DNA of 64,000 bases from Octopus bimaculoides (Eukaryota): assembly GCF_001194135.2 (NCBI RefSeq), contig NC_069003.1:31937463-32001462 (forward strand), read 5' to 3'. The notes under the pieces were generated by a model. That model saw only the letters and a list, made by a program, of their open reading frames with translations. It had not been told where the DNA came from and searched no databases. The translations under genes were made by a program, and so were the position numbers. Numbering within the stretch: position 1 is the stretch's first letter; each line of letters begins with the position of its first letter. Shown in pieces: positions 5,981 to 63,801 of the stretch.

Positions 5981-6057
5981 CTCAAGCACAGGATGATGCT
6001 AATAATATAGCCTCAACAGGATAAGCTATCCCTATTTTTGCAGAAAAAAGTATTGGC

Positions 6058-6133
6058 GGCCAGCTATGAGACTCGAACTCACACCTCCGTGATTACGCGT
6101 CGCGGTGCTCTAGACCGATTAAGCTAAACTGCC
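6058..6133 (-). tRNA. tRNA-like cloverleaf (Thr-CGT-like anticodon), probably a pseudogene or SINE-related
   Basis: A box TAGCTTAATCGG and B box GAGTTCGAGTC; acceptor stem 6/7 paired; D and T stems pair; T6 run 8 nt downstream. Non-canonical: 6-bp anticodon stem with one mismatch, and G at the position of U33. Confidence 0.45.
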
Positions 6134-6239
6134 CCCACAACACACTCTTCCACAAATTTAAGATGTATAGAAATCTGGCTTTATGAGACGCTATTATACA
6201 TTAAATTCAAATTACGATGAACGTAAACAAACGAAGTTT

Positions 6240-25494: not shown

Positions 25495-26290
25495 AAAGAG
25501 AGAAAGAGAGAGAGATAAAGAGACAGACAGATAGACTGACAGAGGGATAGACAAATAGACAGACAGACAGACAGACAGATAGATAGATAGATAGATAGAT
25601 AGACAGACAAATAGCCATAAATGGACAGAGATTGACATAAANNNNNNNNNNNNNNNNNNNNNNNNNNNNNNNNNNNNNNNNNNNNNNNNNNNNNNNNNNN
25701 NNNNNNNNNNNNNNNNNNNNNNNNNNNNNNNNNNNNNNNNNNNNNNNNNNNNNNNNNNNNNNNNNNNNNNNNNNNNNNNNNNNNNNNNNNNNNNNNNNNN
25801 NNNNNNNNNNNNNNNNNNNNNNNNNNNNNNNNNNNNNNNNNNNNNNNNNNNNNNNNNNNNNNNNNNNNNNNNNNNNNNNNNNNNNNNNNNNNNNNNNNNN
25901 NNNNNNNNNNNNNNNNNNNNNNNNNNNNNAGAGGGATAGACAAATAGACAGACAGATAGACTGATAGAGGGATAGACAAATAGATAGACAGACAGACAGA
26001 TAGAGGGATAGACAAATAGACAGATAGACAGACAGAGGGATAGACAAATAGATAGATAGACAGACAGATAGATAGACTGACAGAGGGATAGACAAATAGA
26101 CAGACAGATAGACTGATAGAGGGATAGACAAATAGATAGATAGACAGACAGATAGACTGACAGAGGGATAGACAAATAGACAGACAGACAGACAGACAGA
26201 TAGATAGATAGATAGATAGATAGACAGACAAATAGCCATAAATGGACAGAGATTGACATAAACAGACAAGTAGACAGATAGACAGATACT
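25495..26290 (+). repeat. (GACA)/(GATA) compound satellite with a GAGGGATAGACAAATA higher-order unit, spanning an N gap
   Basis: Direct inspection. Confidence 0.85.
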
Positions 26291-26565: not shown

Positions 26566-27157
26566 TATTTTTGTTTTTAATCTACATAAAGTTACAAGAT
26601 ATTCAAAGGCGGAGAGTTTTCGTGAATGATTATATATATATAGGTTAGGTGATACAAACAAGAAAAATAGAACTCAATACATGAATANNNNNNNNNNNNN
26701 NNNNNNNNNNNNNNNNNNNNNNNNNNNNNNNNNNNNNNNNNNNNNNNNNNNNNNNNNNNNNNNNNNNNNNNNNNNNNNNNNNNNNNNNNNNNNNNNNNNN
26801 NNNNNNNNNNNNNNNNNNNNNNNNNNNNNNNNNNNNNNNNNNNNNNNNNNNNNNNNNNNNNNNNNNNNNNNNNNNNNNNNNNNNNNNNNNNNNNNNNNNN
26901 NNNNNNNNNNNNNNNNNNNNNNNNNNNNNNNNNNNNNNNNNNNNNNNNNNNNNNNNNNNNNNNNNNNNNNNNNNNNNNNNNNNNNNNNNNNNNNNNNNNN
27001 NNNNNNNNNNNNNNNNNNNNNNNNNNNNNNNNNNNNNNNNNNNNNNNNNNNNNNNNNNNNNNNNNNNNNNNNNNNNNNNNNNNNNNNNNNNNNNNNNNNN
27101 NNNNNNNNNNNNNNNNNNNNNNNNNNNNNNNNNNNNNNNNNNNNNNNNNNNNTATAA

Positions 27158-29037: not shown

Positions 29038-29748
29038 AATATTTGTAAAAATCTTCTCAATTCAATGAGGTCATTTCAGAACTTGACAAATAATTGATAT
29101 TAAGAAAACGAAATAATTCGATTCGACTTCATAGAATTATGAACTTTTTCGTGCTGTTGGACTTTAGGAATTACTGAGAATATACATGACTTGATCCTCT
29201 ATCCAATAATAAACACATTCTCTAAATCTATAATTAGAATTTCGATAAATCTCGCGCTTTATATATATATATATATTTTAATTAATGCAAACCCCAAANN
29301 NNNNNNNNNNNNNNNNNNNNNNNNNNNNNNNNNNNNNNNNNNNNNNNNNNNNNNNNNNNNNNNNNNNNNNNNNNNNNNNNNNNNNNNNNNNNNNNNNNNN
29401 NNNNNNNNNNNNNNNNNNNNNNNNNNNNNNNNNNNNNNNNNNNNNNNNNNNNNNNNNNNNNNNNNNNNNNNATTTTGCTTTTAGTGTAGTGTGTTGTCTG
29501 TCTTTTAAACTGTCTTATGTTGAATGTTTCGAATTATATTCTAAGATTTTACAGAAATCTTTATATAATTCTTTCTACTATATATACACAGGACCTGGAA
29601 TTTGGTGGATGGTTACGTGGTGGACACATGAGGCGTCTGCATTGCATGTAAACATGTTAAGGATAGGATCTCAATTATCGCCGGGTGTCTGATGCATTCA
29701 GGAAAAGATGCTCGGGTGGATGTTTACATGTGTAAAACCTGTAATAAG

Positions 29749-33243: not shown

Positions 33244-35285
33244 GTATTGCTTATGCATCTTATAAGACAAAGTATAGCAATTTGTGATGATGTTTATTTA
33301 TACTTTTTTTTAATTATTATTTACGTTGCCTTGCATGTACTTGCTGATCAATTATATATGTTTCCGGTTTTAATTTTTCAAATCTCTGCCCTCAGAGCCA
33401 GTCTCTAGTTCAGAAACAAGAGTGTTGTTTCTGATCTAGTTTCATTGGAATTTAGACGACATCAGCAAGGTACTACACACGTGCACAGTGCTTTCTTGAG
33501 GCGTGGATATATTAGGTAGTTGTCCGTGGGCCTAACGACTTCTCGAGGCCCGATCCTGATATATGTAGATCGCTGTCGATAAATAAATACTATAGGCCCG
33601 ATGCATTGATTTTTCCGATCAGTTTATAGTGCTGCTAAAATAGCCATGCATCTGCATGCATATTTGTCATTGGGTGTAAGGATGTTTCTCCAATCGTATT
33701 TGTACGTCAAATTGTGTGCTTACTATAATTGTCCGGTGTATTCAATATTGTTGTTTTGATCGAGGCCAGCCCTGATCGTGCAGGCCCATAATCAAAGGCA
33801 TTCCTGTCTTTTTAAGTGATATGTGTCTTTTCTTTACTTGAAGCTGTAAGGAGTAATTTGAAAAAATTCGGCTGCTATTTCTAGCAGGTCAAGCGGCAAT
33901 ATACGGGTTTCGTCATTGGTTTGTGTTTGTTTAATATTTGTCTATGGTAGTGAATACTCTCGGTTTGTCCCTGGTCGAAGCTATTTCAATACACTTTTGT
34001 TAATGTCCTTGAAAAAAAAAAGACAGGGAGTGAATTCCTGTACTTGGAGATAGGCTGTCCATTGAGTAAAACACCAGGTGTTTACACCTTTCGAATGTAC
34101 AGTTAAGATTGCTACTCTTATAAATTCCCCACAAATGGTTTCAATACAGTTTTAAAAGATTTGGAAGAATTAGATGAAAGTTCTCCGGTAATTTTCTTTC
34201 ATGTAAATAAATGTTATTCTTACAGTATGTCTATGTAAGAAATTCTCTCCCTCTCTCTCTCCCCCTCTCTCTCTCCCCCTCTCTCTCTCTAATAGCCGCA
34301 GGCGTGACTGTTTGACAAGAAGTTTGCTCCCCAATCCTATGATCCCGTGTTCAGTCGCACTGCGTGACACCTTCGAAGACAGTCTTCTACTGTTACCTTG
34401 GACTAACCGAAACCTTGTGAATGGATTTGGTAGACGGAAACGTTTGTCCCCCATCACCGCTTACAGCCGGTATTGGTGTGTTTACGTCCCCGTAACTTAG
34501 CGGTTCGGCAAATCGGCAAAAGCGACCNNNNNNNNNNNNNNNNNNNNNNNNNNNNNNNNNNNNNNNNNNNNNNNNNNNNNNNNNNNNNNNNNNNNNNNNN
34601 NNNNNNNNNNNNNNNNNNNNNNNNNNNNNNNNNNNNNNNNNNNNNNNNNNNNNNNNNNNNNNNNNNNNNNNNNNNNNNNNNNNNNNNNNNNNNNNNNNNN
34701 NNNNNNNNNNNNNNNNNNNNNNNNNNNNNNNNNNNNNNNNNNNNNNNNNNNNNNNNNNNNNNNNNNNNNNNNNNNNNNNNNNNNNNNNNNNNNNNNNNNN
34801 NNNNNNNNNNNNNNNNNNNNNNNNNNNNNNNNNNNNNAAACTAGGTGAGAGTCGCCGACAGATCTCAAGAGACCTGTCTTTCCCAATGTGTAAAGTCGGA
34901 CGCCGGCGGTCTGAGCGGAAGAGGTCAACGGGTGGATCCAACAGTCAAGAAGGCGATTTCTGCAAACGAGATTGTACAGAACAGGAATCCCCAACTGCTG
35001 GGCTGTTGGTCATTTAACACCAGGCTGCGCAAAAAGAATAAATTTTTAAAATTTTATTTCTATTTTATTGACTGTCGCAAGCGTCAAACTTTCTCAGTCT
35101 AAATTAGTCTGGCGAGGGTTATTTCCCTTGCTTTAATTTCATGGGATATTTTGATGCGAATTGGATGCTACATCAATCATTTTTGTTCTCATACCAATAT
35201 AATATTACCTTTTCTCTTGTCATACCTGTGTAATATTAATGTTTCGATTGTCACACCTGCATAATATCAATTATGATTATTACAG

Positions 35286-42215: not shown

Positions 42216-42946
42216 GTAACTTTTTTTTTTGTTTATATAATAAAGCTTTTAAGGAACAAAACATGGCTGTGATAAAATCATAGCTATTTTTCAGGCCAAA
42301 CAAAGCCTTATGAGTGAATATGGTAGACAGAAACTGAAAGTGCCGTATATATAGAGTGTCAGGCTCACAGTCATAAGGTAGTGAGTTCAATTCTTGGACT
42401 GGGCTGTGTGTTGTGTTCTTGAGCAAGACACTTTATTTCATTGCCATGGAGAACAATTCTTGCTTTAGCTTTAGGTTAACGAATGCTTCATGATTTAAAT
42501 TCGATGGACAGAAACTGTACTGAAGCCTGTCATGTGTGTGTGTGTTTGTCTTCTCAAACTATCACATTGACATCATTTGGGAAATGCTGACACAGGACTA
42601 TTTGATCGAGATTAACTTAGGACTAAGAAACAACAAAGTCAATATTTTTAGTATTACAAGTCTGTCTTACCCTAGATACCACTATTTTTAATATTGATTT
42701 CAAATTTTGGCACAAGGCCAGCAATTTTGAGGGCAGGGCTAAGTTATTTACATCAACCCCAGTACCCAACTGGTATTTATTTTATCAACCCCTAAGGGAT
42801 GAAAAATAAAGTCAACCTTAGCGGAATTTGAACTCAGAACATAAAGACAGACAAAATGCTGCTAAGCATTTCATCCAGCAGGCTAACCATTCTGCCACTC
42901 CACTGCCTACATTTACTTTTGATATTGCAATTCTGTTTTACCCCAG

Positions 42947-50763: not shown

Positions 50764-53603
50764 CTAGAAAGAAGAAAACAGAAGAAACGAAAAAGAAATG
50801 AGAGAAAAAAAAACAAAATAAAGAGAAAAACAATTTTAATTATAACNNNNNNNNNNNNNNNNNNNNNNNNNNNNNNNNNNNNNNNNNNNNNNNNNNNNNN
50901 NNNNNNNNNNNNNNNNNNNNNNNNNNNNNNNNNNNNNNNNNNNNNNNNNNNNNNNNNNNNNNNNNNNNNNNNNNNNNNNNNNNNNNNNNNNNNNNNNNNN
51001 NNNNNNNNNNNNNNNNNNNNNNNNNNNNNNNNNNNNNNNNNNNNNNNNNNNNNNNNNNNNNNNNNNNNNNNNNNNNNNNNNNNNNNNNNNNNNNNNNNNN
51101 NNNNNNNNNNNNNNNNNNATATGACAGTCTTCTGCACAGTTTCCATCTATTAAATTCACTCACAAGGCATTGGTCAGCTCAGAGTCATAGTAGAAGATAC
51201 TTGCTCAAGATGTCATATGGTGGGACTGAACCTGAAGCTACATGGTCGCAAAGCAAGCTTATTAACCATACAGTCATGGGAAAATATTTAATACGGGAAA
51301 AAGACAAAGAAGAGGACAATTTTTTTAAAAGGAATGAAACAAAAACTAAAAGAAACTGTAATTAGATGGAAAAGAAAAAAAAAAAACAGAATAAGAAAAA
51401 GAAAGGTAAGAAATATCCTTTCCAACCCCCAAAAACTGGCCAAAATTGTAATCAGACAGAAAATAAAATGAGGAAAAAAACACACTAAAGAAAAATGAGA
51501 TGAATTTTAAGGTGTAAGGTAAGAAGAGGAACAGAAGCAGCCAATGAAAAGAGGAAACCCAGAAAACAAAAGGGTCCATTTGAAGATATGTTGTAACAGT
51601 CTAGGTTAATGGGTGCAACCAATCAGTTGGTAAATAATAAACCAATCCTTCAATGCCATGAAGACATAGACACACAGACATGGATACAAATGGTTTCCAT
51701 AGAAATGGATTTGGGGAAAGCAATATAGCAATATTCAAGAACATTACTTTGGATTGTAAGTATAAACAATTGCAAATGTGCATCTCTCTCTCTCCGTCTC
51801 TCTCTCTTTGTCGCTTGCTCTTTTAATGTATATTTATTTAAAAGCAGTAACAGATGTACTTCTGGCTTTGGTCCTACTGCACAGCACCTTCAGCAAGAGT
51901 ACTTTGAAAGTGGAATTTGTTTGGCAGAAACAGTGTAGAAGTCTGTTGTTTCATCATCATCATTATTTAACGTCCATTGTCCATGCTGGCATGGGTTGGA
52001 TGGTTTGAACAGGGCTGGCAGCGCTGGAAGGCTGCACCAGACTCCAGTCTGATTTGGCATGGTTTTCTATGGTTGGACGCCCTTCCTAATGCCAACCACT
52101 CTGAGAGTGTAATGGGTGCTTTTACATGCCACTGGCACAGGTGCCATTTGCATATGTCTATATTTACTTAAATGTGAGTGCATGTGTGTATGTATGTGTG
52201 GGTATATGAGTGTATGTATGTTGTGAGCCATGTGGCCTAATGGTTAGGGTGATGCACACATAATCCTAAGACCATGGGTTCAATTTCTGGACTGGGCATT
52301 TTGTTCTAAAGCAAAACACTTCATATGGCTCTACAATCAGTTTGACACCTGAAATGTGGCACACCATGCACCTGCACAGGTAATATCAATTTGATGGACA
52401 AAGTAGACTTATGATCACTACAAACAATTCATCTGTGCAAGTTATTTAGCAAGAAATTCAGAATTGTCTTCCTCAGATCGAGAGATAGCCATTAGTGTAT
52501 GTAGGTATTTAACATATATTTTACCTTGCTTGCATGGGTCAGACGGAATTTGTAAATTCCGTCTGGTACAATGAATGTTAAATACCTAAATAAATCGATT
52601 ACATCAACCCCAGTGCTCAACTGTTGCTTATTTTATCAACCTCAGAAGGATGAACGGCAAAGTTGACCTTCATGGAATTTGAACTCAGAATGTAAAGATG
52701 AAATTCCTCTAAGCATTTTGCCCAGCATGCTAACAATTCTGCCAGCCCACTGCCTTAATTTCTCTCAAAATATTGGATAAATATTTCAAAATTTTTTTAC
52801 AAATATATTTATTCAGTTCAGTTTTCTATCTATTCTGCTGGGTGGACTGTTTTAAAAAAAACCAAGTGCAAGTTAATTATAATTCAAAAGAGCCAGAAGG
52901 TAGTATCATCATCTAGCTGACAGGTTAATCCCTAGAGCTGTATCAGTATAGACAAGTAACAAGCTTAGTCTAGCTAGTGACTGAAGGTGATGTGTCTGTA
53001 TGTGTGCATGTAATATGTGTGAGAGGTGGAAGCGGGGTCTATATCACCCCCCACAACCCCACTACAGCTGAGGTGTTTAACTGTACATCTTTATCTTTTT
53101 TTTCCCCCCTTACGTTGACTAATGCATAGTAGGAGTGGGAGTAGGGGCTGCTAAACTTCCATGTCAATGTGAATCGGGTGAAGGAAGAGGTTACTATAGT
53201 TATATATGTGTATATAACCATCATCATCATTTAAGGTTCACTTTTCCATGCTAGCATGGATCGGACGGAATTTGTTCAGGCAGATTTTTCTATGGTTGGA
53301 TGGCTTTCTGATCACAAACCTTCACCTAGGGTTTTTTTTTCAGTTTCCATCTACTAAATTCACTCTCAAAGCTTTAGTAGGCCCAGACTATCACAGAAGA
53401 CACTTGCCCAAGGTGATGCACAATGGGATTGAACCAGAGATCACATGGTTCGAAAGCAAGCTTTTTAAGCACACACAGCCATACCTGCACATATTCACAG
53501 CCACACCTGTGTCTTTGATAAAAGAGAAAAAGAACACAAGGAAACAAATAACAGACAGTAATGGTTACATCTTTTTCATGAAAAACAACTGTTTTCTCCT
53601 TAC

Positions 53604-53752
53604 TTTTTCTGTTTCTCTGGATGTATGTCGATAATTACATCTTTTTCGTTAACTCTGACTTTTCCTTCAAAATCTTGTGCCAATTTGGAAGCTTCTTCAG
53701 CCTTTTTCTTTTCTTTCTTCTTGTCATCGCCATCACTGTCATCATCATTAAT
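53604..53752 (-). CDS. DNAJC21: DNAJC21 internal exon (INDDDSDGDDKKKEKKKAEEASKLAQDFEGKVRVNEKDVIIDIHPEKQK)
   Basis: TTACAG| acceptor; AAA|GTAAGG donor; phase 0 to 2 links both neighbours; D/E/K-rich linker. Confidence 0.78.
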
Positions 53753-54595
53753 CTGTAACAAAAGATGAGAAAAAGATCAGGTATTATTGCGGTAAATATT
53801 ATGGCAGCAGAACCTTCAGCACTCCACATAAAATGCTTTGTAGCATTTTGTTCCTCTTTACATCCCGAGTTCAATATTCGCCAAGGTTGACTTTACTTTT
53901 CATTCTTTCAGGGTCGATAAAATAAGTACCAGTTGAGCACTGGCTCAATGTCATCGACTTACCCCACAACCCTGAAATTACTGGCCTTGTGCCAAAATTT
54001 GAAACTGTTATTACAATCAATACTTAGGCATTGAGACAGCAGAATTTTTAGCATGCTGGACAAAATGCTCAGCATCATTTCATCCATCTTTATGTTCTAA
54101 GTTCAAATACTGCCGAGGTTGACTTTGCCTTTCATTTTTTCAGAGCCAATAAAATAAGAACCAGTTGAGTACTGGGGCTGATGTAATCAACTTCCCCATC
54201 CCTCAAAATTGCGGGCCTTGTGCCAAAATAAGAAAGGATCATTACACTAAATACTAACCATGAGATTGTAATTCCTCAGACTTAGCAAAGAAACGTTTCC
54301 CCCACCAATATTTATAGTGTCTCAATCAGATTAATCTCCAATTGTTACCAGGTCTTTATTCCTGGATGTAAGCATAGTAGTAACATATCAGACTGGATTT
54401 GAACCAGGAACCCTTATTTTTAAACAGAGTGTTTGGCAATGTTAGCTTTCAGGCCGCATTCCCAGTTAGAGGGCAACTTCTACACACCAGTTGGGAAATA
54501 ACTAAAAAAATAAGAGGACCATAACCAGGAAATACACAAATAGCTAAAATAAAATAAAATAAATAAACAAATAAATAAATAAATATAAATTCCAC

Positions 54596-54647
54596 CTGAG
54601 CAAGAAGTCGCTGTTGTTTCTTCTTTTTCTTCTGTTTTTTTGACATT
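54596..54647 (-). CDS. DNAJC21: DNAJC21 internal exon (MSKKQKKKKKQQRLLAQ)
   Basis: Matches the SKKQKKKKQ segment of DNAJC21; poly-T plus CAG| acceptor; CAG|GTGGAA donor; phase 2 to 0. Confidence 0.82.
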
Positions 54648-56431
54648 CTGAAAAAAAAACAAAAAAAAAAACAAAAAAAAAAACATGATTTATCAATCAC
54701 TGAATGAAATTTAACAGTCAATAAATCAAAACTCCAGACGGTAAGGAATATTACCCTTCTGCTTATTTATTTGCATTCTTTTGCTTTAATCAGGCATTAT
54801 CTTGTAGCTTTGTGACTTAATTAATGTGATTGAATATTTTCAGAATGATATTGTAGGGTAGGTGTGGGAAACCAAATTTAGTTATTTTGAGCACAAATCA
54901 GGTAAGAGTATCTTGGCTAGATAAGGCCAGTTGAACCTTTAGCATTCAGATGACTCTATCAAATGTAAAGCTTATTTATTCACATTGTTTTCAATTAATT
55001 ATGCATTATCTCACAGCTTTGAGATTTCAATAATATGATTATTTATTTTCAGAATGATATTGTAGGATATGTGTGAGAGGCCAGATCTGGCTGGTTTGAA
55101 CATAAAACAGATAGGAATAGTTGAGCCGGAAATGGCAAGTTTAAACGCTAAAGAGTTAAATATGCTATGACTCAGATCTGAATCTTGGAGGACATTTTCA
55201 TGTAATGGTCTCAACCTCATGTTCTTTATTCTGTACCATCAAATCAACGAACAATCCCTGACAAGCACTTTCTGTATGTCAATAACCTTTTTAGAAGAGA
55301 ATAACAAAGAAAGATTTTCTTCTCCCCATTGCTTTCGTTCAGGCAATTTTTACAAGACACAGACAAGTTTGCCTTGCCCCACCTGTCCGATACAGTCACA
55401 AAATAAAAGATCAGAATGTGATTGTTATTTTCAGAATGACATTGTTGAATAGGTGTAAGAGGTTGGATCTGGCAACTTTGAACATATCTATGCTAGATAT
55501 GGCCAATTTAAATGCTAAGTGATTAATATATCAGGTTAGATAGACATAGCCATGATGGGGACGATGTGGTCATTCAACTTGCTAGAAAAAACAGCCATAT
55601 CTCCATCAAATCATTCCTCTACCATTTAAAGAAAATAAGCAAATAATGAATAATGAAATCTGGAGAAATATCACAATATATGAGGAAGGTGGGGATTGTC
55701 ATGGCTGGAAGGCATTTAAGATAAGAGAGAAGGCCAAACAACAATAATAACCACAACAATGAATACATTTTTTAAAAAATACATATTTTAGTGTCATGAT
55801 AAACTTGATTATAATAAAGTAACCTATATAAATCAATGAGAAAGAAAAGCAAAAAATAAATGGGATGGTCAAGGATAGAATGTCTTTTATCATAGGCCTA
55901 CTCGATCAGGGTTTACCTATGACTAAACAACAACAACAACAAAAAAACACCACATAACTACAAAGAAACTGTAACAAAAAAAAAAATCCTAAAATAAAAT
56001 TTAAAAAAAACTACATATTTTAGTGTCAACTAAAAAACTTGGTCATGAAGAAATAAGAAATTCAAAGTGACAAGACAAAAAAAAACTAAAAAATCTTAGC
56101 ACAAAAAAAACAAAAAAACAAAAACAAAAACAAAAGGGAAGCCTCTTAAACTAAACTAAACTATTTAACAGTGTTATTGTAACTTTACAAACATGACTGA
56201 GAGAGTAACAGTGTCAGAATCGTAGCCACAATGACAGGTCTGGCATGAGGCACAGCTGGTGAAAAAATATTCTACTTGTTGTGTAAGTTCCCAGTTAAAC
56301 AAAAGCAGCCAGGTTGATAATGAAGTGTCTGCAGGGTCAAATATATTATTACCAAACTAACGTTAAAATAACTGACATCATTCTAAGCGTGTAATTGGAT
56401 TAGCGATATTCCTAGTGACTTATCAATCTAT

Positions 56432-56463
<32 letters not shown>

Positions 56464-58842
56464 TTATCTATACACACACACACACATATACATATAAAAG
56501 CACTCTGTCAGTTATGATGACGAGGGTTCCAGTTGATCCGATCAACAAAACAGCCCTGCTCATGAAATCAATGTGCAAGTGGCTGAGTGCTCCATAGACA
56601 CATGTACTCTTAACGTAGTTCTCAAAGAGGACATTTTCAGGCAATTTTTACAAGACACAGCTAGACATGGACAAGTTTACCTTGCCATACCTGTTTGATA
56701 TAGTCATAAAATAAAAGATCAGAATGTGATTGTTATTTTCAGAATGACATTGTTGAATAGGTGTAAGAGGTTGGATCTGGCAACCTCGAACACATCTATG
56801 CTAGATATGGCCAATTTAAATGCTAAATGATTAATATATCAAGTTAGATAGACACAGCCATGATGGGGACGATGTGGTCATTCAACTTGCTAGAAAAAAC
56901 AGCCACATCTCCATCAATCTATCCAAACTAAAATCTACAAGAAAGTGCAGCAATATGTGTAGTCATGAACCTCTAGTGGCTTGTTGCCTGGAAGATATCC
57001 AAAAAATTACACATAATTCTGAATGTACAGATTCAACTTTCAACCTACCAATAAATACTCTCCTATCATGATGCCTTTGTAACAAAGGATGGCAGCACAT
57101 CAGTCTATATTCAAATCCTATTACCACCACCATTCTTTATTACCAACCATCATTCCTTTTTCTGAATCTCTCTCTCACTTTCCCATTATTCCCCACCATC
57201 ACTTATTATTTACTCCAATCACTTCCAATTCTTTGGGCCATCAACCATTTTCATTGCTACCCCCACACTCTCTCAAATTACTTCATCCTCTATCACCTGT
57301 TGTCATACATTGCCTCCTTTCTCTTTCTCTCTCTGCCTTCATCACACTACTCATACTGTTTCTATTCAATCCGCTTACCAACAATCATCATGTAGCTGAC
57401 TATCCCTCCCTCTTCTATTCCTCAATATTCTCTCTTCCATCACCCTCTTACTCCAGTTCTTCTGATTCTTCTTTTCTTTTACTCTTCAACCACTCCCCTA
57501 CCCCACTCTCTCTTGCTTTCTTCCCATCCAGCTGCATGAAAAAGAAAAGAATAAATGTACTGAGACAACACAGGGAAAAGAGATTCTCTTTAGTTTTTTG
57601 AGAGAGAAACAGAACAATTCTCAAGGTGGTCCTTTCTTAAAATGCACCCAGTGCCTCTCAGTTGGGTTGTTGGTAGAAAGGCCATCCTGCCTCAGAAACC
57701 ATGCCAAAATGGAACATGCAGGCAAGAAATAACTTCTCAGCTTATCTAGATGGGCAAAAGCTCTGAATAAGGATTGGCTCAAATCATAATGAGCTGTTCA
57801 TTTGTTGATTTCAAAAGAATATTTCCTTTGAGAGAACTCAACAGTCAAGTCGTAAAATAGTCTTTCCAAAGTAAAATGCAATAACACAAAAACAGTAATT
57901 TAAACAGTGATTGCATGTTCATTTTCATTTAAAATCTCTTTTTAATGTTCATAGTAGAAAATAAAATAAAAATTATTGAAAAAGATTTCATATTTTGATA
58001 AATATGAAAGAAAAGAATGAAAGTAAAAAAAAGTTTAAGTGTTCAAACTTAGAAACTAAAATGAACAAAATAAAATAAAATGAGTTTCCTTGCACAATGA
58101 AGATTGCTATATTTTGTAAGTGTCTACTCATAAAATTAGTTGTTAGCAATAGAGATGCAAATGTCAAGTTGGCTAGCTACTTAATAATTTGCATAGTCCA
58201 TGGCAAAACTGTTTGGATATAAGAAAGAACAACACTGAAAACATAATTTTTTGATGCAGGTTAAAAATACAAAGTACAGGGGGAGAAAAAAAAATTATTA
58301 AAAAACCTCCAAAAAAAAAAAAAAGGCAAAGAAAAACCAAGCCCTCATCTTCCACTGATATGATGGGTAGGGGTGGTCGAGGAAATTTTGGCAAACTGTT
58401 TTTGTCTTCAGTTTGATTACATTCTCCCCTCCTGACGTACATAATTGACATGATGTATGCATTAGTAAGGCTGTTTATATTAGATTCGTTTTACTGATTG
58501 CAAATTAATAAATGTAAGGTGTTTTAACATAAGAGAAGAGAAATTGAACAAGAACAATGACGATGACGACAACAACAACAGCAACAACCACGGCAACAAC
58601 AAATCAGTTTTTACAACAAATAAAAGAAGGAATGAACAAGGCAGAAAATAGCAAGGTGGATAAGAAAGTCATTTTCTTCTGAGTTTGACAGAATATGCCA
58701 GACGACAGGGCAATCATTGTTTGTGACAGCAATTATTGTAAGTAAATGTAAATGATACAGGTTAGAATTAGGGTTGAACAAGTTTCACACGATGGGACTT
58801 TTGAAAGGAAGAATAACTGAGCGAGGAACAATAGTAGTGGAG

Positions 58843-59036
58843 AAAAAAAAAAATGAAAGAAGTAAAAAAAAAAAATGAAATAAGTAAAAAAAAAATGAAA
58901 TAAGTAAAAAAAAATGAAATAAGTAAAAAAAAATGAAAGAAGTAAAAAAAAAATGAAATAAGTAAAAGAAAAATTAAATAAGTAAAAAAAAATTAAATAA
59001 GTAAAAAAAAAAATGAAATATGTAAAAAAAAAAAAA
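58843..59036 (+). repeat. A-rich tandem repeat (A8-12 TGAAATAAGT), about 9 units
   Basis: Direct inspection. Confidence 0.85.
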
Positions 59037-59437
59037 GCAACATACCAATGATGGAAAAAATATAAGAGAGAGAGAGAAATGTAAACAAAGATGGAGTAAG
59101 GACAAAATTAAAAAAAAAGAAATGAAGAAAAACAAAGACAGAAAAAGATAAAATTAAAGCAAAAACAAAGCCCTGAGATGTTTTCTATTATTTATAACAA
59201 TATCCGGTGTATCTAATTTCACCTTGAAGTTTTGAAGTCATTTAGTCAGACAAAAGTATATGATGAGATAGTGAAAGGTAGGGGAGAGTAAAATAACAAA
59301 GATATATCCAGATATTTAAGACAGCCCGTCTAGTAACCATGATCAGAGTGCCACTAACTAGAGGGGAAGAAAGAAGCAGGTGGCAGATCTTGTCTAGTAG
59401 TAACTGCTGTACAACATTCCCAGTATTTTTCATTATA

Positions 59438-62400
59438 ATGGAGACAGCGTTCGCTTTGGGATTGATCCTGCTTTTATATAGCGCTGCTACTATAACAGCA
59501 CGGCCGAATGCGGGAGCACGGTCGGCCGAAGAAGAGACCAATTTCGAAACAATGGTTCGGTTTTTGGTCAAGAAGCTCAATTCAAATGAACACCTACTAC
59601 AACTCTTGGAACATAGATTCGAGAAGATGTCTGGAAATGTAAAAGTACATGCCTTGCTATTACAAAGACTCAAGAACGAACTGAAAAGTTACAGAGCAAG
59701 AAAGCAGAAACTAAGTGGAAACCTAACTACTAAGGATAATCCGTTATATTCTGATGGCACAAATAAACGGAGAGTACTGCACAGAGCAAGACGGCAGGCA
59801 GCTTACAGTTTTTTAAGCCCAGAGATTCTTGAAACGCTTGCACAACAAGAAAGAATCGGTGTCAATGACACCCCCATGGTGTTTGCCAGTGATCCACCAC
59901 CTTTATTTCCTCAGGAGCTGATTTTCGTGAGTGCTCCAAATGTGCAGAGCACGCCAGAAGAAAACCTTGGGGAAACTACCGCGACTGTTACGGTTAGCAC
60001 AGCCCCTCCTTCAACAAGTCCCACAGCAGAATTGAGAATTAAACTGCATCATAACGTAGATAGCAATCCAACCAATGCCCAAAGCCAAGGACAACCACAA
60101 CCACAGCCACAACTTCAAGAACAACCTCAACCTCAACAGCAACAACCACCACCTCAACAACAACAACAACAACAACCCCAACAACAACAGCCACAACAGC
60201 AGCAGCAACAACAACAACAACAACAACAACAACAGCAACAATACCGAGGTTCAGACAATCTTGTTTTGCCACAACCAAAAGCAACTCCACAACCAGGTGT
60301 ACTCAAGGAAGCTGATGAAGAATACGAAGCAGGAGATAATTATTCATCGTCAGCAGGTAATTCTTGGAGTAAATTCAATAAATCTGAAAAGAGCTCAGGC
60401 TCGGGACAGCGAACGGAACCGGATGAAATGGAACATGGAACCAAGAAAGGCTCTGGTAGAGATTCAGAGGGAGATGAACACCATAAAACCAGGTTCAATA
60501 CTCATTCACGTCTATTTGGAAAACAGCATGGAAACAAAAGGAACTTCAAAGGCCCTCAAAAGAAAGACAGTGATTATGAGGTCTCCGACAAAGAAGAACG
60601 AGCATTTGTTCGTAGTAGTGAATATGAAAACTCAGAAACAAGTGGATTATCAAGGAAACGGCGATTTCAACCAATGGCCATTCGTGCTCATGATCCAAGA
60701 GTTGATTATACACCTGAAATGAATTATCCTTTACAACCAGACAAAGGCCAGGAAACAGAAGAGAGTCAACCTTCTGAAAATGGAAAATCTAGTAACGCTG
60801 GCATTGTTTGGATTTCAAAAGACAGTCGGAATGAACTGGGTACGATAGAACCAGAAACAAAATCTGGACAACAGAATTCTCAAGACAACTTAACAATTTT
60901 TCAAAGAATTGATGGTTCTTCTCAAGATTATCCAGGGAATAAAGAATCAGGAGCAACCAACAAACAAGATACGGATGAGTCTAAAACGGCACAGAGTGAA
61001 AATGGAGAACAAGCAGGTCAGGAACAACAAGGCCAGCAAGAGGCAGATACGACAGACACGAAGGGAAGTAACTCACAGAATCAGCCAGGAACTGATGATC
61101 ACAAAACACCTTATCTTTACCCAGGAATAGATGAACATGGAATCCCACATGCTTACCCTGGGGTAGACGAACATGGAATCCCACATCTGTACCCAGGAAT
61201 TGACGAGCATGGCATCCCGCATCTTTATTCCGGTATAGATGGATATGGAATTCCGTACGGAGGCCAAGTTGGCGATGAGTACGGGACTCATCTGTTGCCT
61301 ATTGAAGAAAGCAACAATCACAAACACAATGTGCCAACTGGTGTGCAAAATGGCATGATAGACAAGAACAGATATGAAGGGATGTATCCAGGTGACGGTT
61401 TTCTAAACCCTCCGTATGGTGCAGAAAACTACTTGGACTTCCCACTTGATGGCGAAGCTGGTCAGATGAACATTCCGGAGGAAGAAGAAAAAAAAGATGG
61501 ATCTGATGAAAGCAGTGATGAAGATACTAAAGGTGCAGCGTTGTCTCACAGTAAATATGGTGGAGTTAGACACATGGAAAGACTAAGAGCAGGAGATATT
61601 ATATCCTCAGCAGAAAGACCAGCATTTAATATGGATCTTTATCCAGCAGAATCAAACACTTTGGCCGATAACAGTGCACAAGGGGACAAAGATTCAGAAG
61701 AATCTGGAGAAGCACCAACTCACAACGCCAGAAGTTACCATGGTGATTACCACGACCCAGTCAACAGTCAGTTGTTTATGTTTAACAAAGAATATCCTGA
61801 TAAGAATTCGTTGTTACACAAAATCCAAATGGCTGCCAACCAAAGGAATCCAATATATTCAGGAATAGATCCAGACGAAAATCAAAGTACTGACAAGCAG
61901 AACATGAATTATGGCAGACCAAACTACAACATAAATCAAAGGCATGACAGTAATCCTGGCAGGTATTTACCAAATTCAAACAGACAAGGATTTAATAGGG
62001 ATTTTAGACGTCGGAGTTTTGATGGGATGAATAGAGGAATTCATGATACAACATCCAATCGATTTGGATATGGCACAATGTCGGATCACTCGGGTTACGA
62101 CAAAGGCTTTGATCGGTTAAACTACGAGTCTAGATTGTTCGGTAAACCCTTTTACAACACAAATCCAAAGGGATACTATCACAGTCAAAACAGGGGTTAC
62201 AACAACAACCCTTTCTCAAACTACAACAGTCAACCAAACTACAACAGTCAACCAAACTACAACATGGGGTCGAAAAGAAGCAGACATATGATCCAATCTA
62301 ACAGCAGGTCAAATCTCCATTCTATGCAGAGGATGCATAACCTACCATTCAGCAGATATAATACCAAAAGTGGATACAATGCAGAGAACAGTTACAATAA

Positions 62401-62662
62401 CAACCAGTATTACGATATTGGAAGAAACAACCGAGTAGAAAGCAGCTACACATCACACACCAGAGGCACTGCCTATCCAGCTTCAGATGAACAAGATGAG
62501 ATATTTGGCACTGACGCCTATTACAACAATGACAGTGGAGAAGTAAGAGATGAACGAAAGAACAATGCCAATAGCAACACCAACAACAACAATAGCAACA
62601 AAAATAACAACACACATCATGACAGTGCTGAGAGAAGAAACAGCAATAATTTCATGTATTAA
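59438..62662 (+). CDS. Uncharacterised secreted, cysteine-free, low-complexity precursor protein (1074 aa from the likely start Met)
   Basis: 3.2-kb uninterrupted ORF in otherwise stop-rich DNA; ATAATGG start context; signal peptide METAFALGLILLLYSAATITA; RARR and RKRR furin sites; polyQ; internal peptide repeats. An in-frame upstream ATG lies at 59339. Confidence 0.85.
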   Translation: METAFALGLILLLYSAATITARPNAGARSAEEETNFETMVRFLVKKLNSNEHLLQLLEHRFEKMSGNVKVHALLLQRLKNELKSYRARKQKLSGNLTTKDNPLYSDGTNKRRVLHRARRQAAYSFLSPEILETLAQQERIGVNDTPMVFASDPPPLFPQELIFVSAPNVQSTPEENLGETTATVTVSTAPPSTSPTAELRIKLHHNVDSNPTNAQSQGQPQPQPQLQEQPQPQQQQPPPQQQQQQQPQQQQPQQQQQQQQQQQQQQQQYRGSDNLVLPQPKATPQPGVLKEADEEYEAGDNYSSSAGNSWSKFNKSEKSSGSGQRTEPDEMEHGTKKGSGRDSEGDEHHKTRFNTHSRLFGKQHGNKRNFKGPQKKDSDYEVSDKEERAFVRSSEYENSETSGLSRKRRFQPMAIRAHDPRVDYTPEMNYPLQPDKGQETEESQPSENGKSSNAGIVWISKDSRNELGTIEPETKSGQQNSQDNLTIFQRIDGSSQDYPGNKESGATNKQDTDESKTAQSENGEQAGQEQQGQQEADTTDTKGSNSQNQPGTDDHKTPYLYPGIDEHGIPHAYPGVDEHGIPHLYPGIDEHGIPHLYSGIDGYGIPYGGQVGDEYGTHLLPIEESNNHKHNVPTGVQNGMIDKNRYEGMYPGDGFLNPPYGAENYLDFPLDGEAGQMNIPEEEEKKDGSDESSDEDTKGAALSHSKYGGVRHMERLRAGDIISSAERPAFNMDLYPAESNTLADNSAQGDKDSEESGEAPTHNARSYHGDYHDPVNSQLFMFNKEYPDKNSLLHKIQMAANQRNPIYSGIDPDENQSTDKQNMNYGRPNYNINQRHDSNPGRYLPNSNRQGFNRDFRRRSFDGMNRGIHDTTSNRFGYGTMSDHSGYDKGFDRLNYESRLFGKPFYNTNPKGYYHSQNRGYNNNPFSNYNSQPNYNSQPNYNMGSKRSRHMIQSNSRSNLHSMQRMHNLPFSRYNTKSGYNAENSYNNNQYYDIGRNNRVESSYTSHTRGTAYPASDEQDEIFGTDAYYNNDSGEVRDERKNNANSNTNNNNSNKNNNTHHDSAERRNSNNFMY

Positions 62663-63139
62663 GATATTTGCATTCTGATGAGTTAGCTTCTGCCCAGCTG
62701 TTAACATGAACGACCAACACAAGGTATGTTACTGAAGCACACACATACACACATTATTATTATTATTATTATTAACTCCAGTTTCGTTGGAATTTTTGGA
62801 GTCTTGCATGTATAAAGGGCTTGCTATCTGTAGCCTACAGTACCATGCTATCTATTCTTTTCAACTATCTAATACTTGCATGTTTATTTTGTATCATTAT
62901 TATCATTATTACTATTTTTAAGGTGGCAAACTAGCAGAATCGTTAGTATACCAGGCAAAATGCCTAGTGGCATTTCATCTGTCTTTATGTTCTGAGTTCA
63001 AATGCCGCCGAGGTCAACTTTGCCTTTCATCCTTTTGGAGTCAATAAAATAAATATCAATTGAGCACTGGGGTAGGGTGGGGGTCAATGTAATTGACTTA
63101 CCCTCTAGCCCAAAACTGCTTCTCTTGTGCCAAAATTTG

Positions 63140-63160
63140 AAATTATTATTATTATTATTA

Positions 63161-63197
<37 letters not shown>

Positions 63198-63490
63198 TGT
63201 TGTTATTATTACTTTATATACACACAATAGATTAAACTGGTGGAAAAGCAAAATTCCCAGCAATGGGATACAAGTAACCTTAGATGCCAAAAACCTTCCA
63301 AAGTATCCTAGCTGTCCCTAATAACACTGTTTTCTGGAGTTGCACTAAACTAGGTTTTATGCCTATTTCCTCAATCCATCTGTTCAAATCTTCAGGGATA
63401 GTCCCTAATGCCCCTATAACTACAGGGATACATTTTACACACTCTTTCCATAACACTACTTATAGCCTTGAGATAATGCCATTACCTTAT
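63140..63490 (-). mobile_element. 3' end of an R4/Dong-like (RLE) non-LTR retrotransposon next to a (TAA)n tract
   Basis: WKECVKCIPVVIGALGTIPEDLNRWIEEIGIKPSLVQLQKTVLLGTARILWKVFGI* (stop at 63280-63282), then a short 3' UTR and (AAT)n. Confidence 0.75.
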
Positions 63491-63801
63491 TTTAACACTT
63501 TCAATACCAACTCATCTAAGTTCAAATCTAATTCTATTATAGACAATCATATTTTTCAAGTATTCATATTTGAATTAAAAATATCCATTACGATTTTCTC
63601 TAAGACCATTTTCTTGAGTTATGTTGTGAACCAGTTTAATATTGGCAAAAAAAAATTTAAGTATTTTTGTCAATATTAAACTGCAAATTCATGATTATTT
63701 TCAAAATTGAATGGAACGCACAAACATATATTATGACACTAAGAGATATGCAGACATACATCTGTATATGTGTGTTGAGTGTCTGGAGTGGTGTACAGAT
63801 A

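What the first reader, a model, noticed from the sequence alone, without database searches (positions are those of the whole stretch)
59438..62662. Orphan Cys-free secreted polyprotein with a propeptide and multiple convertase sites
Seen: signal peptide; an amphipathic helical segment (HLLQLLEHRF...LLLQRLKNELK); a furin site HRARR|Q at 59783-59794 that would expose a Gln able to form pyroglutamate; RKRR at 60653-60664; further basic sites (NKR, RRR, KRSR); no cysteine in 1074 aa. Modules run in order: P/T-rich, polyQ, acidic S/E/D, His/Tyr repeat, acidic, then an N/Y/G/R-rich tail. Known: this layout resembles prohormone/granin-like precursors and molluscan structural or matrix proteins that are processed by convertases. 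Inference: a lineage-specific precursor cut into several functional parts. I do not recognise it as reflectin, suckerin or any named neuropeptide precursor. This is the best candidate for an undescribed system in the window.
Basis: partly seen in the sequence, partly recalled or inferred. Interest (0 to 1): 0.82.

Follow-up and report, generated by a model that had tools for sequence, protein, structure and literature searches.

The report
Cephalopod-only secreted disordered protein precursor
This is a real, transcribed, single-exon gene found so far only in octopuses, argonauts and cuttlefish; it encodes a cysteine-free, almost wholly disordered secreted protein with two conserved furin-type cleavage sites, it matches no known protein family, and its function is untested.

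Summary
Window 59438-62662 (+), in Octopus bimaculoides, is a 1074-codon ORF with 0 Cys.

It is a real gene:
- dN/dS is 0.11 (O. bimaculoides vs O. sinensis) and 0.17 (two Sepia species).
- The Sepia esculenta ortholog assembles full-length and unspliced from at least 10 whole-hatchling RNA-seq runs.
- Orthologs exist in only five coleoid species. Two searches of 5.8 billion proteins and a profile search of 1.84 billion representatives found nothing else. Pfam, PDB sequence and fold searches also found nothing.

All five orthologs are Cys-free. Each has exactly two R-x-[KR]-R motifs, at the same aligned positions. Ser in S-x-E motifs is selectively conserved (9/12 vs 11/87, p=1.5e-5). Two acidic-Tyr motifs are invariant. 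No Gly-dibasic amidation signal exists. AlphaFold predicts disorder except for a basic (pI 10.6) helical pro-region, which is the most constrained part.

Best reading: a coleoid-restricted secretory phosphoprotein precursor, cut by furin-type convertases into a basic pro-piece, a variable linker and an acidic His/Tyr/Asp-rich scaffold. Whether it is a matrix or biomaterial protein or a granin-like granule cargo cannot be decided without tissue data. The NCBI name "GATA zinc finger domain-containing protein 14-like" is wrong.

The parts
58685..58748 (+). Distal conserved noncoding element (TTGACAGAATATG ... ATTGTTTG ... CAATTATT). It is the likely promoter/TSS region.
   Evidence: It is conserved between Octopus and two Sepia species. 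In Sepia it coincides with the 5' ends of the RNA-seq contigs, at L001 1246-1305. The promoter role is inferred.
59187..59291 (+). Proximal conserved noncoding block in the 5' leader. It includes the 24-mer GTATCTAATTTCACCTTGAAGTTT at 59209-59232.
   Evidence: The block is about 88% identical to Sepia. The 24-mer is identical in O. bimaculoides, O. sinensis and two Sepia species, 225-229 nt upstream of the ATG, and is absent within 6 kb in Argonauta. It lies inside the Sepia transcripts. No RNA structure signal was found.
59339..59437 (+). In-frame upstream ATG plus 33 codons (MIRVPL...). This is probably 5' leader rather than coding sequence.
   Evidence: Annotators used it as the start in both Octopus species. 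It is not conserved as coding: indels break the frame relative to Sepia, Sepia has no ATG there, and the Argonauta model starts at MEAAF.
59438..59500 (+). Signal peptide (residues 1-21, METAFALGLILLLYSAATITA), with cleavage predicted before RPN.
   Evidence: The hydrophobic core is conserved in 5 species and has small residues at -1. This is a heuristic call; SignalP was not run.
59501..59794 (+). Basic helical pro-region (residues 22-119), pI about 10.6, net charge +11. It carries a conserved N-glycosylation sequon at N95.
   Evidence: AF2 predicts helices at 30-48, 51-63 and 68-94 with pLDDT about 70-75. It is the most constrained part of the protein: dN/dS is 0.03 for codons 1-100 in the Sepia pair and 0.07 for codons 1-200 in the Octopus pair. 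Charge is and the sequon.
59783..59794 (+). Furin-type site 1: H-R-A-R-R | Q.
   Evidence: The motif is R-A-[RK]-R in 5 of 5 species, once the Argonauta ORF is read from its genome. The P1' residue is Q or E.
59795..60664 (+). Variable middle fragment (residues 120-409). It contains the conserved N-terminus QAAYSFLSPEILE, a P/T-rich mucin-like stretch (59888-60037), an octopod-specific polyQ/P tract (60080-60244), and acidic-Tyr motifs EEYE (within 60308-60337) and D.DYE (within 60563-60589).
   Evidence: See the alignments. PolyQ is absent in Sepia. The acidic-Tyr motifs are conserved in 5 of 5 species. This fragment has the highest dN/dS.
60653..60664 (+). Furin-type site 2: S-R-K-R-R | F.
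   Evidence: The motif is R-[KQ]-R-R in 5 of 5 species. It is followed by the most conserved block of the protein.
60665..62659 (+). Acidic C-terminal fragment (residues 410-1074, about 75 kDa, net charge -31). Its parts are:
- the FQPMAIRAHDP..YTPE block (60665-60745)
- NAGIVWISKD (60794-60823)
- 12-aa YPGIDEHGIPHL repeats (61112-61249)
- GIPYG..EYGTHLLP (61247-61300)
- the EEKKDGSDESSDEDT cluster (61478-61528)
- HMERLRAGD (61571-61597)
- an S-x-E pair (61673-61711)
- an N/Y/G/R tail (61838-62434)
- SDE..FG.D.YY..DSGE (62483-62554)
- the C-terminus ERRNSNNFMY
   Evidence: Conserved blocks are shown. The 36-nt repeat has the same period at the homologous place in Sepia. For S-x-E conservation, Fisher p=1.5e-5. 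AF2 predicts disorder, with pLDDT about 25-40.
62660..62662 (+). Stop codon TAA.
   Evidence: The C-terminal ...F.Y-stop is conserved in 5 species.

Best explanation
This is a single-copy, intronless gene that databases show only in coleoid cephalopods. In octopods it lies antisense inside a DNAJC21-like gene. It encodes a protein of about 119 kDa that enters the secretory pathway.

Proposed mechanism:
1. The signal peptide is removed.
2. In the Golgi, the chain is probably O-glycosylated on its P/T-rich stretch. It is probably tyrosine-sulfated at two invariant acidic-Tyr motifs. It is probably phosphorylated by a Fam20C-type kinase at conserved S-x-E sites.
3. A furin-type proprotein convertase cuts at two invariant R-x-[KR]-R sites. 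This gives a strongly basic helical pro-piece of about 11 kDa, a fast-evolving linker of 25-33 kDa, and an acidic, disordered C-terminal piece of about 75 kDa. That last piece is rich in conserved Tyr, Asp and His and contains 12-residue D-E-H repeats.
4. I infer that the basic pro-piece masks, chaperones or sorts the acidic chain until cleavage.
5. I infer that the released phosphorylated piece binds divalent cations and self-assembles as a scaffold.

Of the possible destinations I lean to an extracellular or lumenal matrix or biomaterial role (about 0.45). A granin-like granule-cargo role is less likely (about 0.25-0.3).

Shown: the gene is real, constrained and transcribed; the motifs are conserved; disorder is predicted. 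Inferred: secretion, every modification, cleavage, and the function.
For: Real gene:
- Chance of the ORF is about 1e-34.
- dN/dS is 0.11 and 0.17.
- Full-length unspliced transcripts come from at least 10 S. esculenta whole-hatchling RNA-seq runs (PMC9538352, PMC11917092, PMC10442824, PMC10466719).

Restricted distribution: only O. sinensis, Argonauta hians and two Sepia species turned up in two word-indexed searches of 5.8 billion proteins and one exhaustive profile search of 1.84 billion representatives. Pfam, PDB sequence and Foldseek searches gave nothing.

Secretory route: the N-terminal hydrophobic core and c-region are conserved, there is no other hydrophobic segment, and N-glycosylation sequons at N95 and N143 are conserved.

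Processing: each of the 5 orthologs has exactly two R-x-[KR]-R motifs, at the same aligned positions. The P1' residue of site 1 is Q or E.

Phosphorylation: Ser in S-x-E is conserved 9/12 against 11/87 for other Ser (p=1.5e-5). Fam20C-type S-x-E phosphorylation of secreted mollusc proteins is documented (PMC4094399, PMC5824888).

Charge: the pro-piece has pI 10.6 (+11), while the remainder is net -38 in Octopus and -57 in Sepia.

Disorder: mean pLDDT is 32. Tyr (49%), Asp (46%) and Trp (2/2) are the most conserved residues, and Q, T, A, S and N the least. That is a sticker-and-spacer pattern.

Repeats: the His/Asp/Tyr repeat has the same 12-aa period at the homologous place in both lineages.
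Against: - No experiment or predictor shows secretion, cleavage or any modification. SignalP and ProP could not be run.
- In Octopus an in-frame ATG 33 codons upstream could put the hydrophobic segment inside the chain.
- The basic clusters could in principle be nuclear localisation signals.
- The count of furin motifs alone is only borderline (p=0.05). Their conservation is not independent of the conserved blocks around them.
- Only five species from three families are available.
- The shallow alignment may inflate the disorder prediction.
- There is no tissue-resolved expression. Whole hatchlings do not separate neurons from secretory epithelia.
- Single copy, slow-evolving motifs and an N-terminal piece under very strong constraint are less typical of structural matrix proteins.
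Confidence: 0.6

Rival explanations
1. Granin-like cargo or prohormone of the regulated secretory pathway. The acidic disordered chain would aggregate with Ca2+ at low pH in the trans-Golgi, help build dense-core granules in neurons or endocrine cells, and be cut into bioactive peptides. Candidates are the piece starting pGlu-AAYSF..., the block FQPMAIRAHDP..., and the C-terminal heptapeptide N...F.Y that follows R[RK].
For: - The chain is acidic, Cys-free and disordered, with conserved termini and divergent spacers.
- The acidic-Tyr and S-x-E motifs are conserved.
- Besides the furin sites, conserved dibasic pairs occur at 858-859 and 1066-1067, with an approximate one at 946-947.
- It is single-copy with strong constraint on the N-terminal helical region, as in granin sorting domains.
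- A molluscan prohormone is known to be cut first at a unique tetrabasic furin site, with the halves sorted separately (PMC2119775).
- Granins aggregate at pH 6.4 in Ca2+ (PMC2289203).
Against: - There is no Pfam Granin match or any similarity.
- There is no Gly-dibasic amidation signal and no repeated peptides.
- Most conserved blocks are not flanked by basic pairs.
- It is about twice the length of known granins.
- Tandem His/Tyr/Asp repeats and an N/Y/G-rich tail are not granin-like.
- There is no evidence of neural expression.
Confidence: 0.27
2. The N-terminal basic helical piece is the active product, for example a secreted ligand or a cationic antimicrobial-type peptide. The long acidic remainder would be a neutralising carrier, which reverses the usual sense of 'propeptide'.
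For: - Codons 1-100 have dN/dS 0.03, far below the rest of the protein. Codons 1-200 of the Octopus pair give 0.07.
- It is the only part predicted to be structured, with pLDDT about 70-75.
- Its +11 charge opposes a strongly acidic partner.
- A furin site releases it precisely.
Against: - The acidic part carries many invariant motifs of its own and is under purifying selection throughout (dN/dS 0.05-0.33). It is therefore not a mere carrier.
- The helices are not significantly amphipathic.
- No fold match was found.
- Argonauta tolerates a 47-residue polyS/polyN insertion inside this region.
Confidence: 0.15
3. It is a non-secreted nuclear or cytoplasmic Q/N-rich prion-like protein, as the automatic name 'GATA zinc finger domain-containing protein 14-like' implies. 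The basic clusters would then be nuclear localisation signals.
For: - It has polyQ and polyN tracts and an N/Y/G/S-rich tail.
- KRRVLHRARR and RKRR resemble monopartite NLSs.
- The in-frame upstream ATG in Octopus would make the hydrophobic segment internal.
Against: - With 0 Cys in all five orthologs, a GATA zinc finger is impossible. No Pfam domain was found.
- The polyQ and polyN tracts are lineage-specific insertions, not conserved features.
- The hydrophobic N-terminus directly follows the only conserved ATG. Sepia has no upstream ATG.
- The sequons, acidic-Tyr motifs and S-x-E motifs are conserved and only make sense in the secretory pathway.
Confidence: 0.04
4. It is not a functional gene: a chance ORF in low-complexity DNA, a pseudogene, or a transposon remnant.
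For: It is intronless and nested in another gene's intron, it contains microsatellite-like tracts, and no known domain was found.
Against: - The chance of the ORF is about 1e-34.
- The ORF is intact in five species of octopods and cuttlefish.
- dN/dS is 0.11-0.17.
- It is transcribed.
- There are no transposon domains and no extra copies in the window.
Confidence: 0.01

Closest known systems
Granins (chromogranin A/B, secretogranin II, VGF)
   Same: They are secreted, acidic, largely disordered and Cys-poor. They carry sulfated Tyr and phospho-Ser, have conserved ends with divergent middles, and are processed at basic sites. From my own knowledge: some have homopolymer Glu/Gln tracts, and the VGF coding sequence also sits in one exon.
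   Different: There is no sequence or Pfam relationship. This protein is about twice as long. Only two canonical furin sites plus a few dibasic pairs are conserved. It has His/Tyr/Asp tandem repeats, an N/Y/G-rich tail and a strongly basic pro-piece. Localisation is unknown.
Vertebrate SIBLING/SCPP acidic phosphoproteins (DMP1, DSPP, MEPE, osteopontin)
   Same: They are secreted disordered acidic proteins with clusters of S-x-E/Ser-Asp sites for Fam20C. They are cut proteolytically into functional fragments, bind cations and mineral, and have most of their coding sequence in one large exon.
   Different: They are not homologous and are vertebrate-only. They are cut by BMP1/tolloid rather than furin. 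They carry RGD, whereas this protein has R-x-G-D. They lie in a tandem gene cluster, whereas this gene is single-copy and nested in another gene.
Molluscan matrix and biomaterial proteins (Pif; N/G/Y-rich shell proteins; squid beak His-rich proteins, suckerins)
   Same: They are lineage-restricted secreted proteins with low-complexity repeats. From my own knowledge: Pif is cut at a furin-type RMKR site into two functional halves. Some are His/Tyr/Gly/Asn-rich modules that cross-link or coacervate.
   Different: This protein has no VWA, chitin-binding or other domain and no similarity to any of them. It is single-copy and much better conserved across about 35-40%-identity distances than such proteins usually are. 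No link to any tissue has been shown.
Aplysia egg-laying hormone prohormone (molluscan prohormone with one tetrabasic furin site)
   Same: A first cut at a unique tetrabasic site splits the precursor into N- and C-terminal intermediates (PMC2119775). Here the conserved S-R-K-R-R site divides the chain in the same way.
   Different: The ELH precursor is small and packed with dibasic-flanked, partly amidated peptides. This protein has none of these.

Membership tests
Granin family (Pfam Granin, chromogranin/secretogranin) | Granin sequence signatures or profile match | tested here: not met
   There was no Pfam family at E<=1. No granin appeared among the hits of any homology search.
Granin family (Pfam Granin, chromogranin/secretogranin) | Acidic, disordered secretory protein with several conserved basic processing sites | tested here: met
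   pI is 5.7 overall, and the 410-857 segment has pI 4.66. Mean pLDDT is 32. Two furin motifs plus dibasic pairs at 858 and 1066 are conserved.
Granin family (Pfam Granin, chromogranin/secretogranin) | Storage in dense-core granules; Ca2+/low-pH aggregation | not testable with these tools
   This needs cell fractionation or imaging and in vitro aggregation assays.
Classical neuropeptide polyprotein | Repeated peptide copies flanked by dibasic sites, often with Gly amidation donors | tested here: not met
   There are 0 G-[KR][KR] motifs against 0.95 expected. The tandem repeats are not flanked by basic pairs.
Furin/proprotein-convertase substrate | R-x-[KR]-R motif in a protein that enters the secretory pathway, conserved in orthologs | tested here: met
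   RARR/RAKR and RKRR/RQRR are present in 5 of 5 species, and these are the only two such motifs in each protein. Actual cleavage is not testable here.
Fam20C (Golgi casein kinase) substrate | S-x-E sites in a secretory protein | tested here: met
   There are 12 S-x-E motifs, 8 identical in all orthologs. Ser in S-x-E is conserved 9/12 against 11/87 for other Ser, p=1.5e-5. Phosphorylation itself is not testable here.
SIBLING/SCPP | Homology, a vertebrate 4q-type gene cluster, and an RGD motif | tested here: not met
   There is no similarity and no paralog nearby. The conserved motif is R-x-G-D, not RGD.
Pif-type shell matrix protein | VWA and chitin-binding domains in a precursor split at a furin site | tested here: not met
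   No Pfam domain was found. Only the furin-split feature is shared.
Reflectin / suckerin / beak His-rich proteins | Family-specific repeat motifs and sequence similarity | tested here: not met
   There was no Pfam hit, and none of these appeared among the homology hits.
GATA zinc finger domain-containing protein (name given by NCBI to the O. sinensis ortholog) | GATA-type Cys4 zinc finger | tested here: not met
   All five orthologs have 0 Cys, and there is no Pfam GATA hit. The name reflects polyN/polyQ similarity only.

The most novel reading that the evidence does not exclude
This is a coleoid-cephalopod innovation: a self-assembling secretory scaffold with a built-in safety catch. A basic helical pro-piece would keep the phosphorylated, His/Tyr/Asp-rich acidic chain soluble until furin removes it. 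The chain would then condense with divalent cations. It would either form the matrix of a cephalopod-specific structure (statolith, beak, radula or shell-sac product) or act as the first granin-type dense-core granule organiser described outside vertebrates. A perfectly conserved 24-nt element in the 5' leader would control it.
Probability: 0.25. Interest if true: 0.65.

Novelty: new variant of a known kind. Interest (0 to 1): 0.45.

Why it matters
Cephalopods have many lineage-restricted genes, and few have any functional hypothesis. This one is unusually tractable. It is single-copy and intronless, it is conserved between octopuses and cuttlefish, and it is transcribed in hatchlings. It also carries precise, testable sites: two furin sites, S-x-E sites, sulfo-Tyr motifs and a His repeat.

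If it is a matrix scaffold, it would point to the molecular basis of a coleoid-specific material. If it is granin-like, it would bear on how invertebrates build dense-core granules without recognisable granins.

The work also corrects a misleading public name and a faulty Argonauta gene model.

Tried and rejected
I replaced it with an alignment of exact sequences in which the polyQ/polyN columns fall in insert states.
- The only new hit, P0005, is a cytochrome P450 model with an artefactual YDTSVGKKV tandem repeat. It matches the Sepia tail repeat; hhalign probability is 6%. Rejected.
- Structure searches: the full-length model is too disordered to search. The N-terminal model gave no Foldseek hit better than E=0.95. 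PDB sequence searches were empty or non-significant.
- The conserved 5' block was tested as an RNA structure. It gave -3.4 kcal/mol and essentially no covariation. Rejected.
- A TATA-box reading of ATATTTAAG at 59311 was dropped because Sepia transcripts start well upstream of it.
- A splice-donor-like AAGGTATGT after the stop is not positionally conserved and is retained in Sepia transcripts. I make no claim of a 3' UTR intron.
- A J-domain probe written from memory found no host-gene exon in the window.
- Literature searches found nothing on this protein. I searched for its peptide strings, its accessions and the automatic name, and for cephalopod granins and statolith matrix proteomes.
- The run accessions only led to whole-hatchling RNA-seq, so there is no tissue information.
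- No paralog exists in the window or the fetched loci.


Full report
**1. The observation**

The window holds one long ORF on the + strand, 59339-62662. It has no Cys and two Trp.

RARR is at 59783-59794 and RKRR at 60653-60664, exactly as stated. NKR, RRR and KRSR are also present. The order of modules is as described: P/T-rich, polyQ/P, acidic, a 12-residue His/Tyr repeat, an acidic Ser cluster, then an N/Y/G/R-rich tail.

It is the only genuine ORF above 200 codons in 64 kb; the others run through N gaps or simple repeats. At this base composition a 1107-codon stop-free run has a probability of about 1e-34.

**2. Where it comes from, and whether it is a gene**

An exact look-up places the 1107-residue version on Octopus bimaculoides chromosome CM046623.1 (GCA_001194135.2). 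There it is annotated as an uninterrupted CDS inside the span of an opposite-strand gene.

The O. sinensis ortholog is 91% identical (XP_036368395/6, named 'GATA zinc finger domain-containing protein 14-like'). The Argonauta hians ortholog is in the same position. In both, the host gene encodes DnaJ + ZUO1-like + zf-C2H2_jaz domains, that is, a DNAJC21-like protein.

dN/dS is 0.11 between the two Octopus species (dS 0.20). It is 0.17 between the two cuttlefish orthologs (dS 0.44), with 0.03 for the first 100 codons.

The more distant relative P0003 is from Sepia esculenta. Contigs encoding it come from runs SRR19578101, SRR20545806/809/813/814, SRR31864754/755 and SRR25114243. The papers that deposited these describe them as RNA-seq of whole larvae (PMC9538352, PMC11917092, PMC10442824, PMC10466719).

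All these contigs are collinear with a 7 kb genomic-looking contig from about 380-424 nt upstream of the ATG to about 419 nt past the stop. The mRNA is therefore unspliced across the whole ORF. The gene is real, constrained and expressed.

**3. Distribution**

Three searches returned only four relatives:
- a search of about 5.8 billion proteins with the full sequence;
- a second search with a profile from which polyQ/polyN had been removed;
- an exhaustive HMM search of 1.84 billion cluster representatives.

The four relatives are O. sinensis, A. hians, S. esculenta and a second Sepia-like species from an ENA assembly. One extra hit is a repeat artefact.

Pfam, PDB sequence and Foldseek searches were empty. 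No paper contains its peptides or accessions. As far as these databases go, it is a coleoid-restricted orphan family. Squid, Nautilus and other molluscs could not be searched at genome level.

**4. Anatomy and conservation**

The Argonauta gene model lacks the region of furin site 1. The genome itself carries one open 1235-codon frame, and the model had spliced out low-complexity coding sequence. With true full-length sequences:
- All five orthologs (1015-1235 residues) have 0 Cys.
- Each has exactly two R-x-[KR]-R motifs, at the same two aligned positions.
- The residue after site 1 is Gln in four species and Glu in one.

Conserved blocks are:
- RSAEEE.N...M.RFLVKK.N.NE
- KMSGNVKVH.LLLQ.LK.EL
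- HRA[RK]R|[QE].YSFLSPEILE
- GLSR[KQ]RR|FQPMAIRA.DP..YTPE
- NAGIVWISKD
- the D-E-H repeats
- GIPYG.Q.G..YG.HLLP
- EEK..GSDESSDEDT
- HMER.R.GD
- FN.DL
- SAQ.D..S.ES.E
- SDE....FG.D..Y...DSGE
- the C-terminus ER[RK]N...F.Y

PolyQ (octopods), polyS/polyN (Argonauta pro-region), NPNP (Argonauta tail) and the 9-residue NDYDLNYG repeat (Sepia tail) are lineage-specific insertions.

Motif statistics:
- Ser within S-x-E is conserved 9/12 against 11/87 for other Ser (Fisher p=1.5e-5).
- The acidic-Tyr motifs EEYE and D.DY[ED] are invariant.
- Sequons at N95 and N143 are conserved.
- There is no Gly-dibasic amidation signal.
- NKR is not conserved. RRR keeps an RR pair in four of the five species; Argonauta has R-H-R. 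The pair before the C-terminal heptapeptide is conserved in all.
- Tyr (49%), Asp (46%) and both Trp are the most conserved residues. Gln, Thr, Ala, Ser and Asn are the least.
- The pro-region has pI 10.6 (+11). The rest is net -38 in Octopus and -57 in Sepia.

Structure:
- AlphaFold gives mean pLDDT 32 for the whole chain.
- Run alone, the first 160 residues give pLDDT 60. Helices are predicted at 30-48, 51-63, 68-94, 107-122 and 128-140.
- The helices' hydrophobic moments are not above shuffled controls.

**5. Flanks**

Two noncoding elements upstream are conserved between Octopus and Sepia.
- Distal element, 58685-58748 (TTGACAGAATATG, ATTGTTTG, CAATTATT). It coincides with the 5' ends of the Sepia transcripts and is probably the promoter/TSS region.
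- Proximal block, 59187-59291. Its 24-mer GTATCTAATTTCACCTTGAAGTTT is identical in four species, 225-229 nt before the ATG. It lies in the Sepia 5' leader, has no RNA-structure signal, and is missing near the Argonauta gene.

In Octopus a 19-20-nt A-rich minisatellite (58844-59033) lies between the two elements.

The in-frame ATG at 59339 that annotators used is not conserved as coding sequence. METAF at 59438 is the likely start.

**6. Mechanism**

The evidence fits a secretory-pathway precursor:
1. The signal peptide is removed before RPN.
2. Golgi modification follows. O-glycans would be added on the P/T stretch, sulfate on the two acidic Tyr, and phosphate on S-x-E sites by a Fam20C-type kinase. 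That kinase and its site preference are documented for mollusc secreted proteins (PMC4094399, PMC5824888).
3. A furin-type convertase cuts at two sites.

The products would be a basic helical piece of about 11 kDa, a fast-evolving linker, and an acidic scaffold of about 75 kDa whose conserved residues are aromatic and acidic 'stickers' plus His.

I infer two further points. The basic pro-piece masks or sorts the acidic chain until cleavage. The released piece binds divalent cations and self-assembles.

All steps after 'the motifs are conserved' are inference.

**7. Which biological role**

Features favouring a matrix or biomaterial scaffold:
- large size;
- tandem His/Tyr/Asp repeats;
- an N/Y/G tail and a mucin-like stretch;
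- no peptide-precursor features.

Features favouring a granin-like cargo or prohormone:
- single copy;
- strongly constrained termini and short motifs;
- a furin-released N-terminal domain;
- the molluscan precedent of a first cut at a tetrabasic site (PMC2119775);
- the granin habit of Ca2+/low-pH aggregation (PMC2289203).

I lean to the matrix reading (about 0.45 against 0.27). Only expression data can decide, because whole-hatchling RNA-seq gives no tissue resolution.

A third reading is that the basic N-terminal piece is the active product. Its dN/dS of 0.03 suggests this, but the many invariant motifs in the acidic part weaken it.

A nuclear Q/N-rich protein, as the NCBI name implies, is very unlikely. 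There is no Cys for a zinc finger, the homopolymers are lineage-specific, and the conserved motifs belong to the secretory pathway.

**8. Comparison and novelty**

It works like known convertase-processed, Fam20C-type secreted disordered phosphoproteins (granins, SIBLINGs, Pif). It is a member of none of them: every sequence-based membership test failed, while the functional-motif tests were met.

I rate it a new variant of a known kind. It is an uncharacterised, coleoid-restricted family with its own architecture. Interest is moderate. Orphan secreted disordered proteins are common in cephalopods, but this one has unusually clear, conserved and testable sites.

Noticed in passing
window 59438-62662; O. 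sinensis XP_036368395.1/XP_036368396.1: The public name 'GATA zinc finger domain-containing protein 14-like' is a misnomer. It comes from polyN/polyQ similarity. The protein has no Cys and no GATA domain.
   Followed up: yes
L013 6001-9708 (Argonauta hians BAAFZT010000050.1): The annotated 925-aa model (GAB1606299.1) removes about 930 nt of low-complexity coding sequence as 'introns'. The genome has one open 1235-codon frame that includes furin site 1 and a 47-residue polyS/polyN insertion in the pro-region.
   Followed up: yes
window about 53500-63700; L005, L012, L013: The gene is nested antisense within the span of a DNAJC21-like gene (DnaJ + ZUO1-like + zf-C2H2_jaz) in O. sinensis and Argonauta. 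In O. bimaculoides it sits in a 549-aa opposite-strand gene. No J-domain exon was found in the window itself.
   Followed up: partly
window 59209-59232 (within 59187-59291): The 24-nt element GTATCTAATTTCACCTTGAAGTTT is identical in two Octopus and two Sepia species at a fixed 225-229 nt upstream of the ATG. It lies inside the Sepia 5' leader, shows no RNA structure signal, and is absent within 6 kb in Argonauta. Its function is unknown.
   Followed up: partly
window 58685-58748: A second Octopus-Sepia conserved noncoding element has Sox-like (ATTGTTTG), Meis-like (TGACAG) and homeodomain-like (CAATTA) cores. It sits at the 5' ends of the Sepia RNA contigs. The motif readings come from memory and were not tested.
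   Followed up: partly
window 58844-59033: An A-rich minisatellite (unit AAAAAAAAAATGAAATAAGT, about 9.5 copies) lies between the two conserved upstream elements. If transcribed, it would put a series of Met-Lys-stop mini-uORFs in the 5' leader. It is absent in Sepia.
   Followed up: no
window 59339-59437: An in-frame ATG 33 codons upstream is present in both Octopus species and is used by the annotators as the start. It would bury the signal-peptide core. It is not conserved in Sepia or in the Argonauta model.
   Followed up: partly
window 62933-63155, 54037-54255, 42687-42895 and others: A repeat of about 220 nt (possibly a SINE) occurs in several copies. One copy lies just downstream of the gene. 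Other dispersed repeats are shared with the O. sinensis locus.
   Followed up: no
window 6054-6134 (-): tRNA-Thr (CGT), found by both ARAGORN and Rfam. It is the only Rfam hit at gathering score in the window.
   Followed up: no
window 123-480, 9827-10133, 25642-25929, 26688-27152, 29299-29471, 34528-34837, 50847-51118 and smaller: There are eleven runs of N (2353 nt in all), which are assembly gaps. They produce the spurious long 'ORFs' elsewhere in the window.
   Followed up: yes
P0005 (database protein, not in the window): This is a cytochrome P450 gene model with about 60 tandem copies of YDTSVGKKV inserted in the middle. It is probably an assembly or annotation artefact. It gave a spurious E=1e-26 match to the Sepia tail repeat.
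   Followed up: yes
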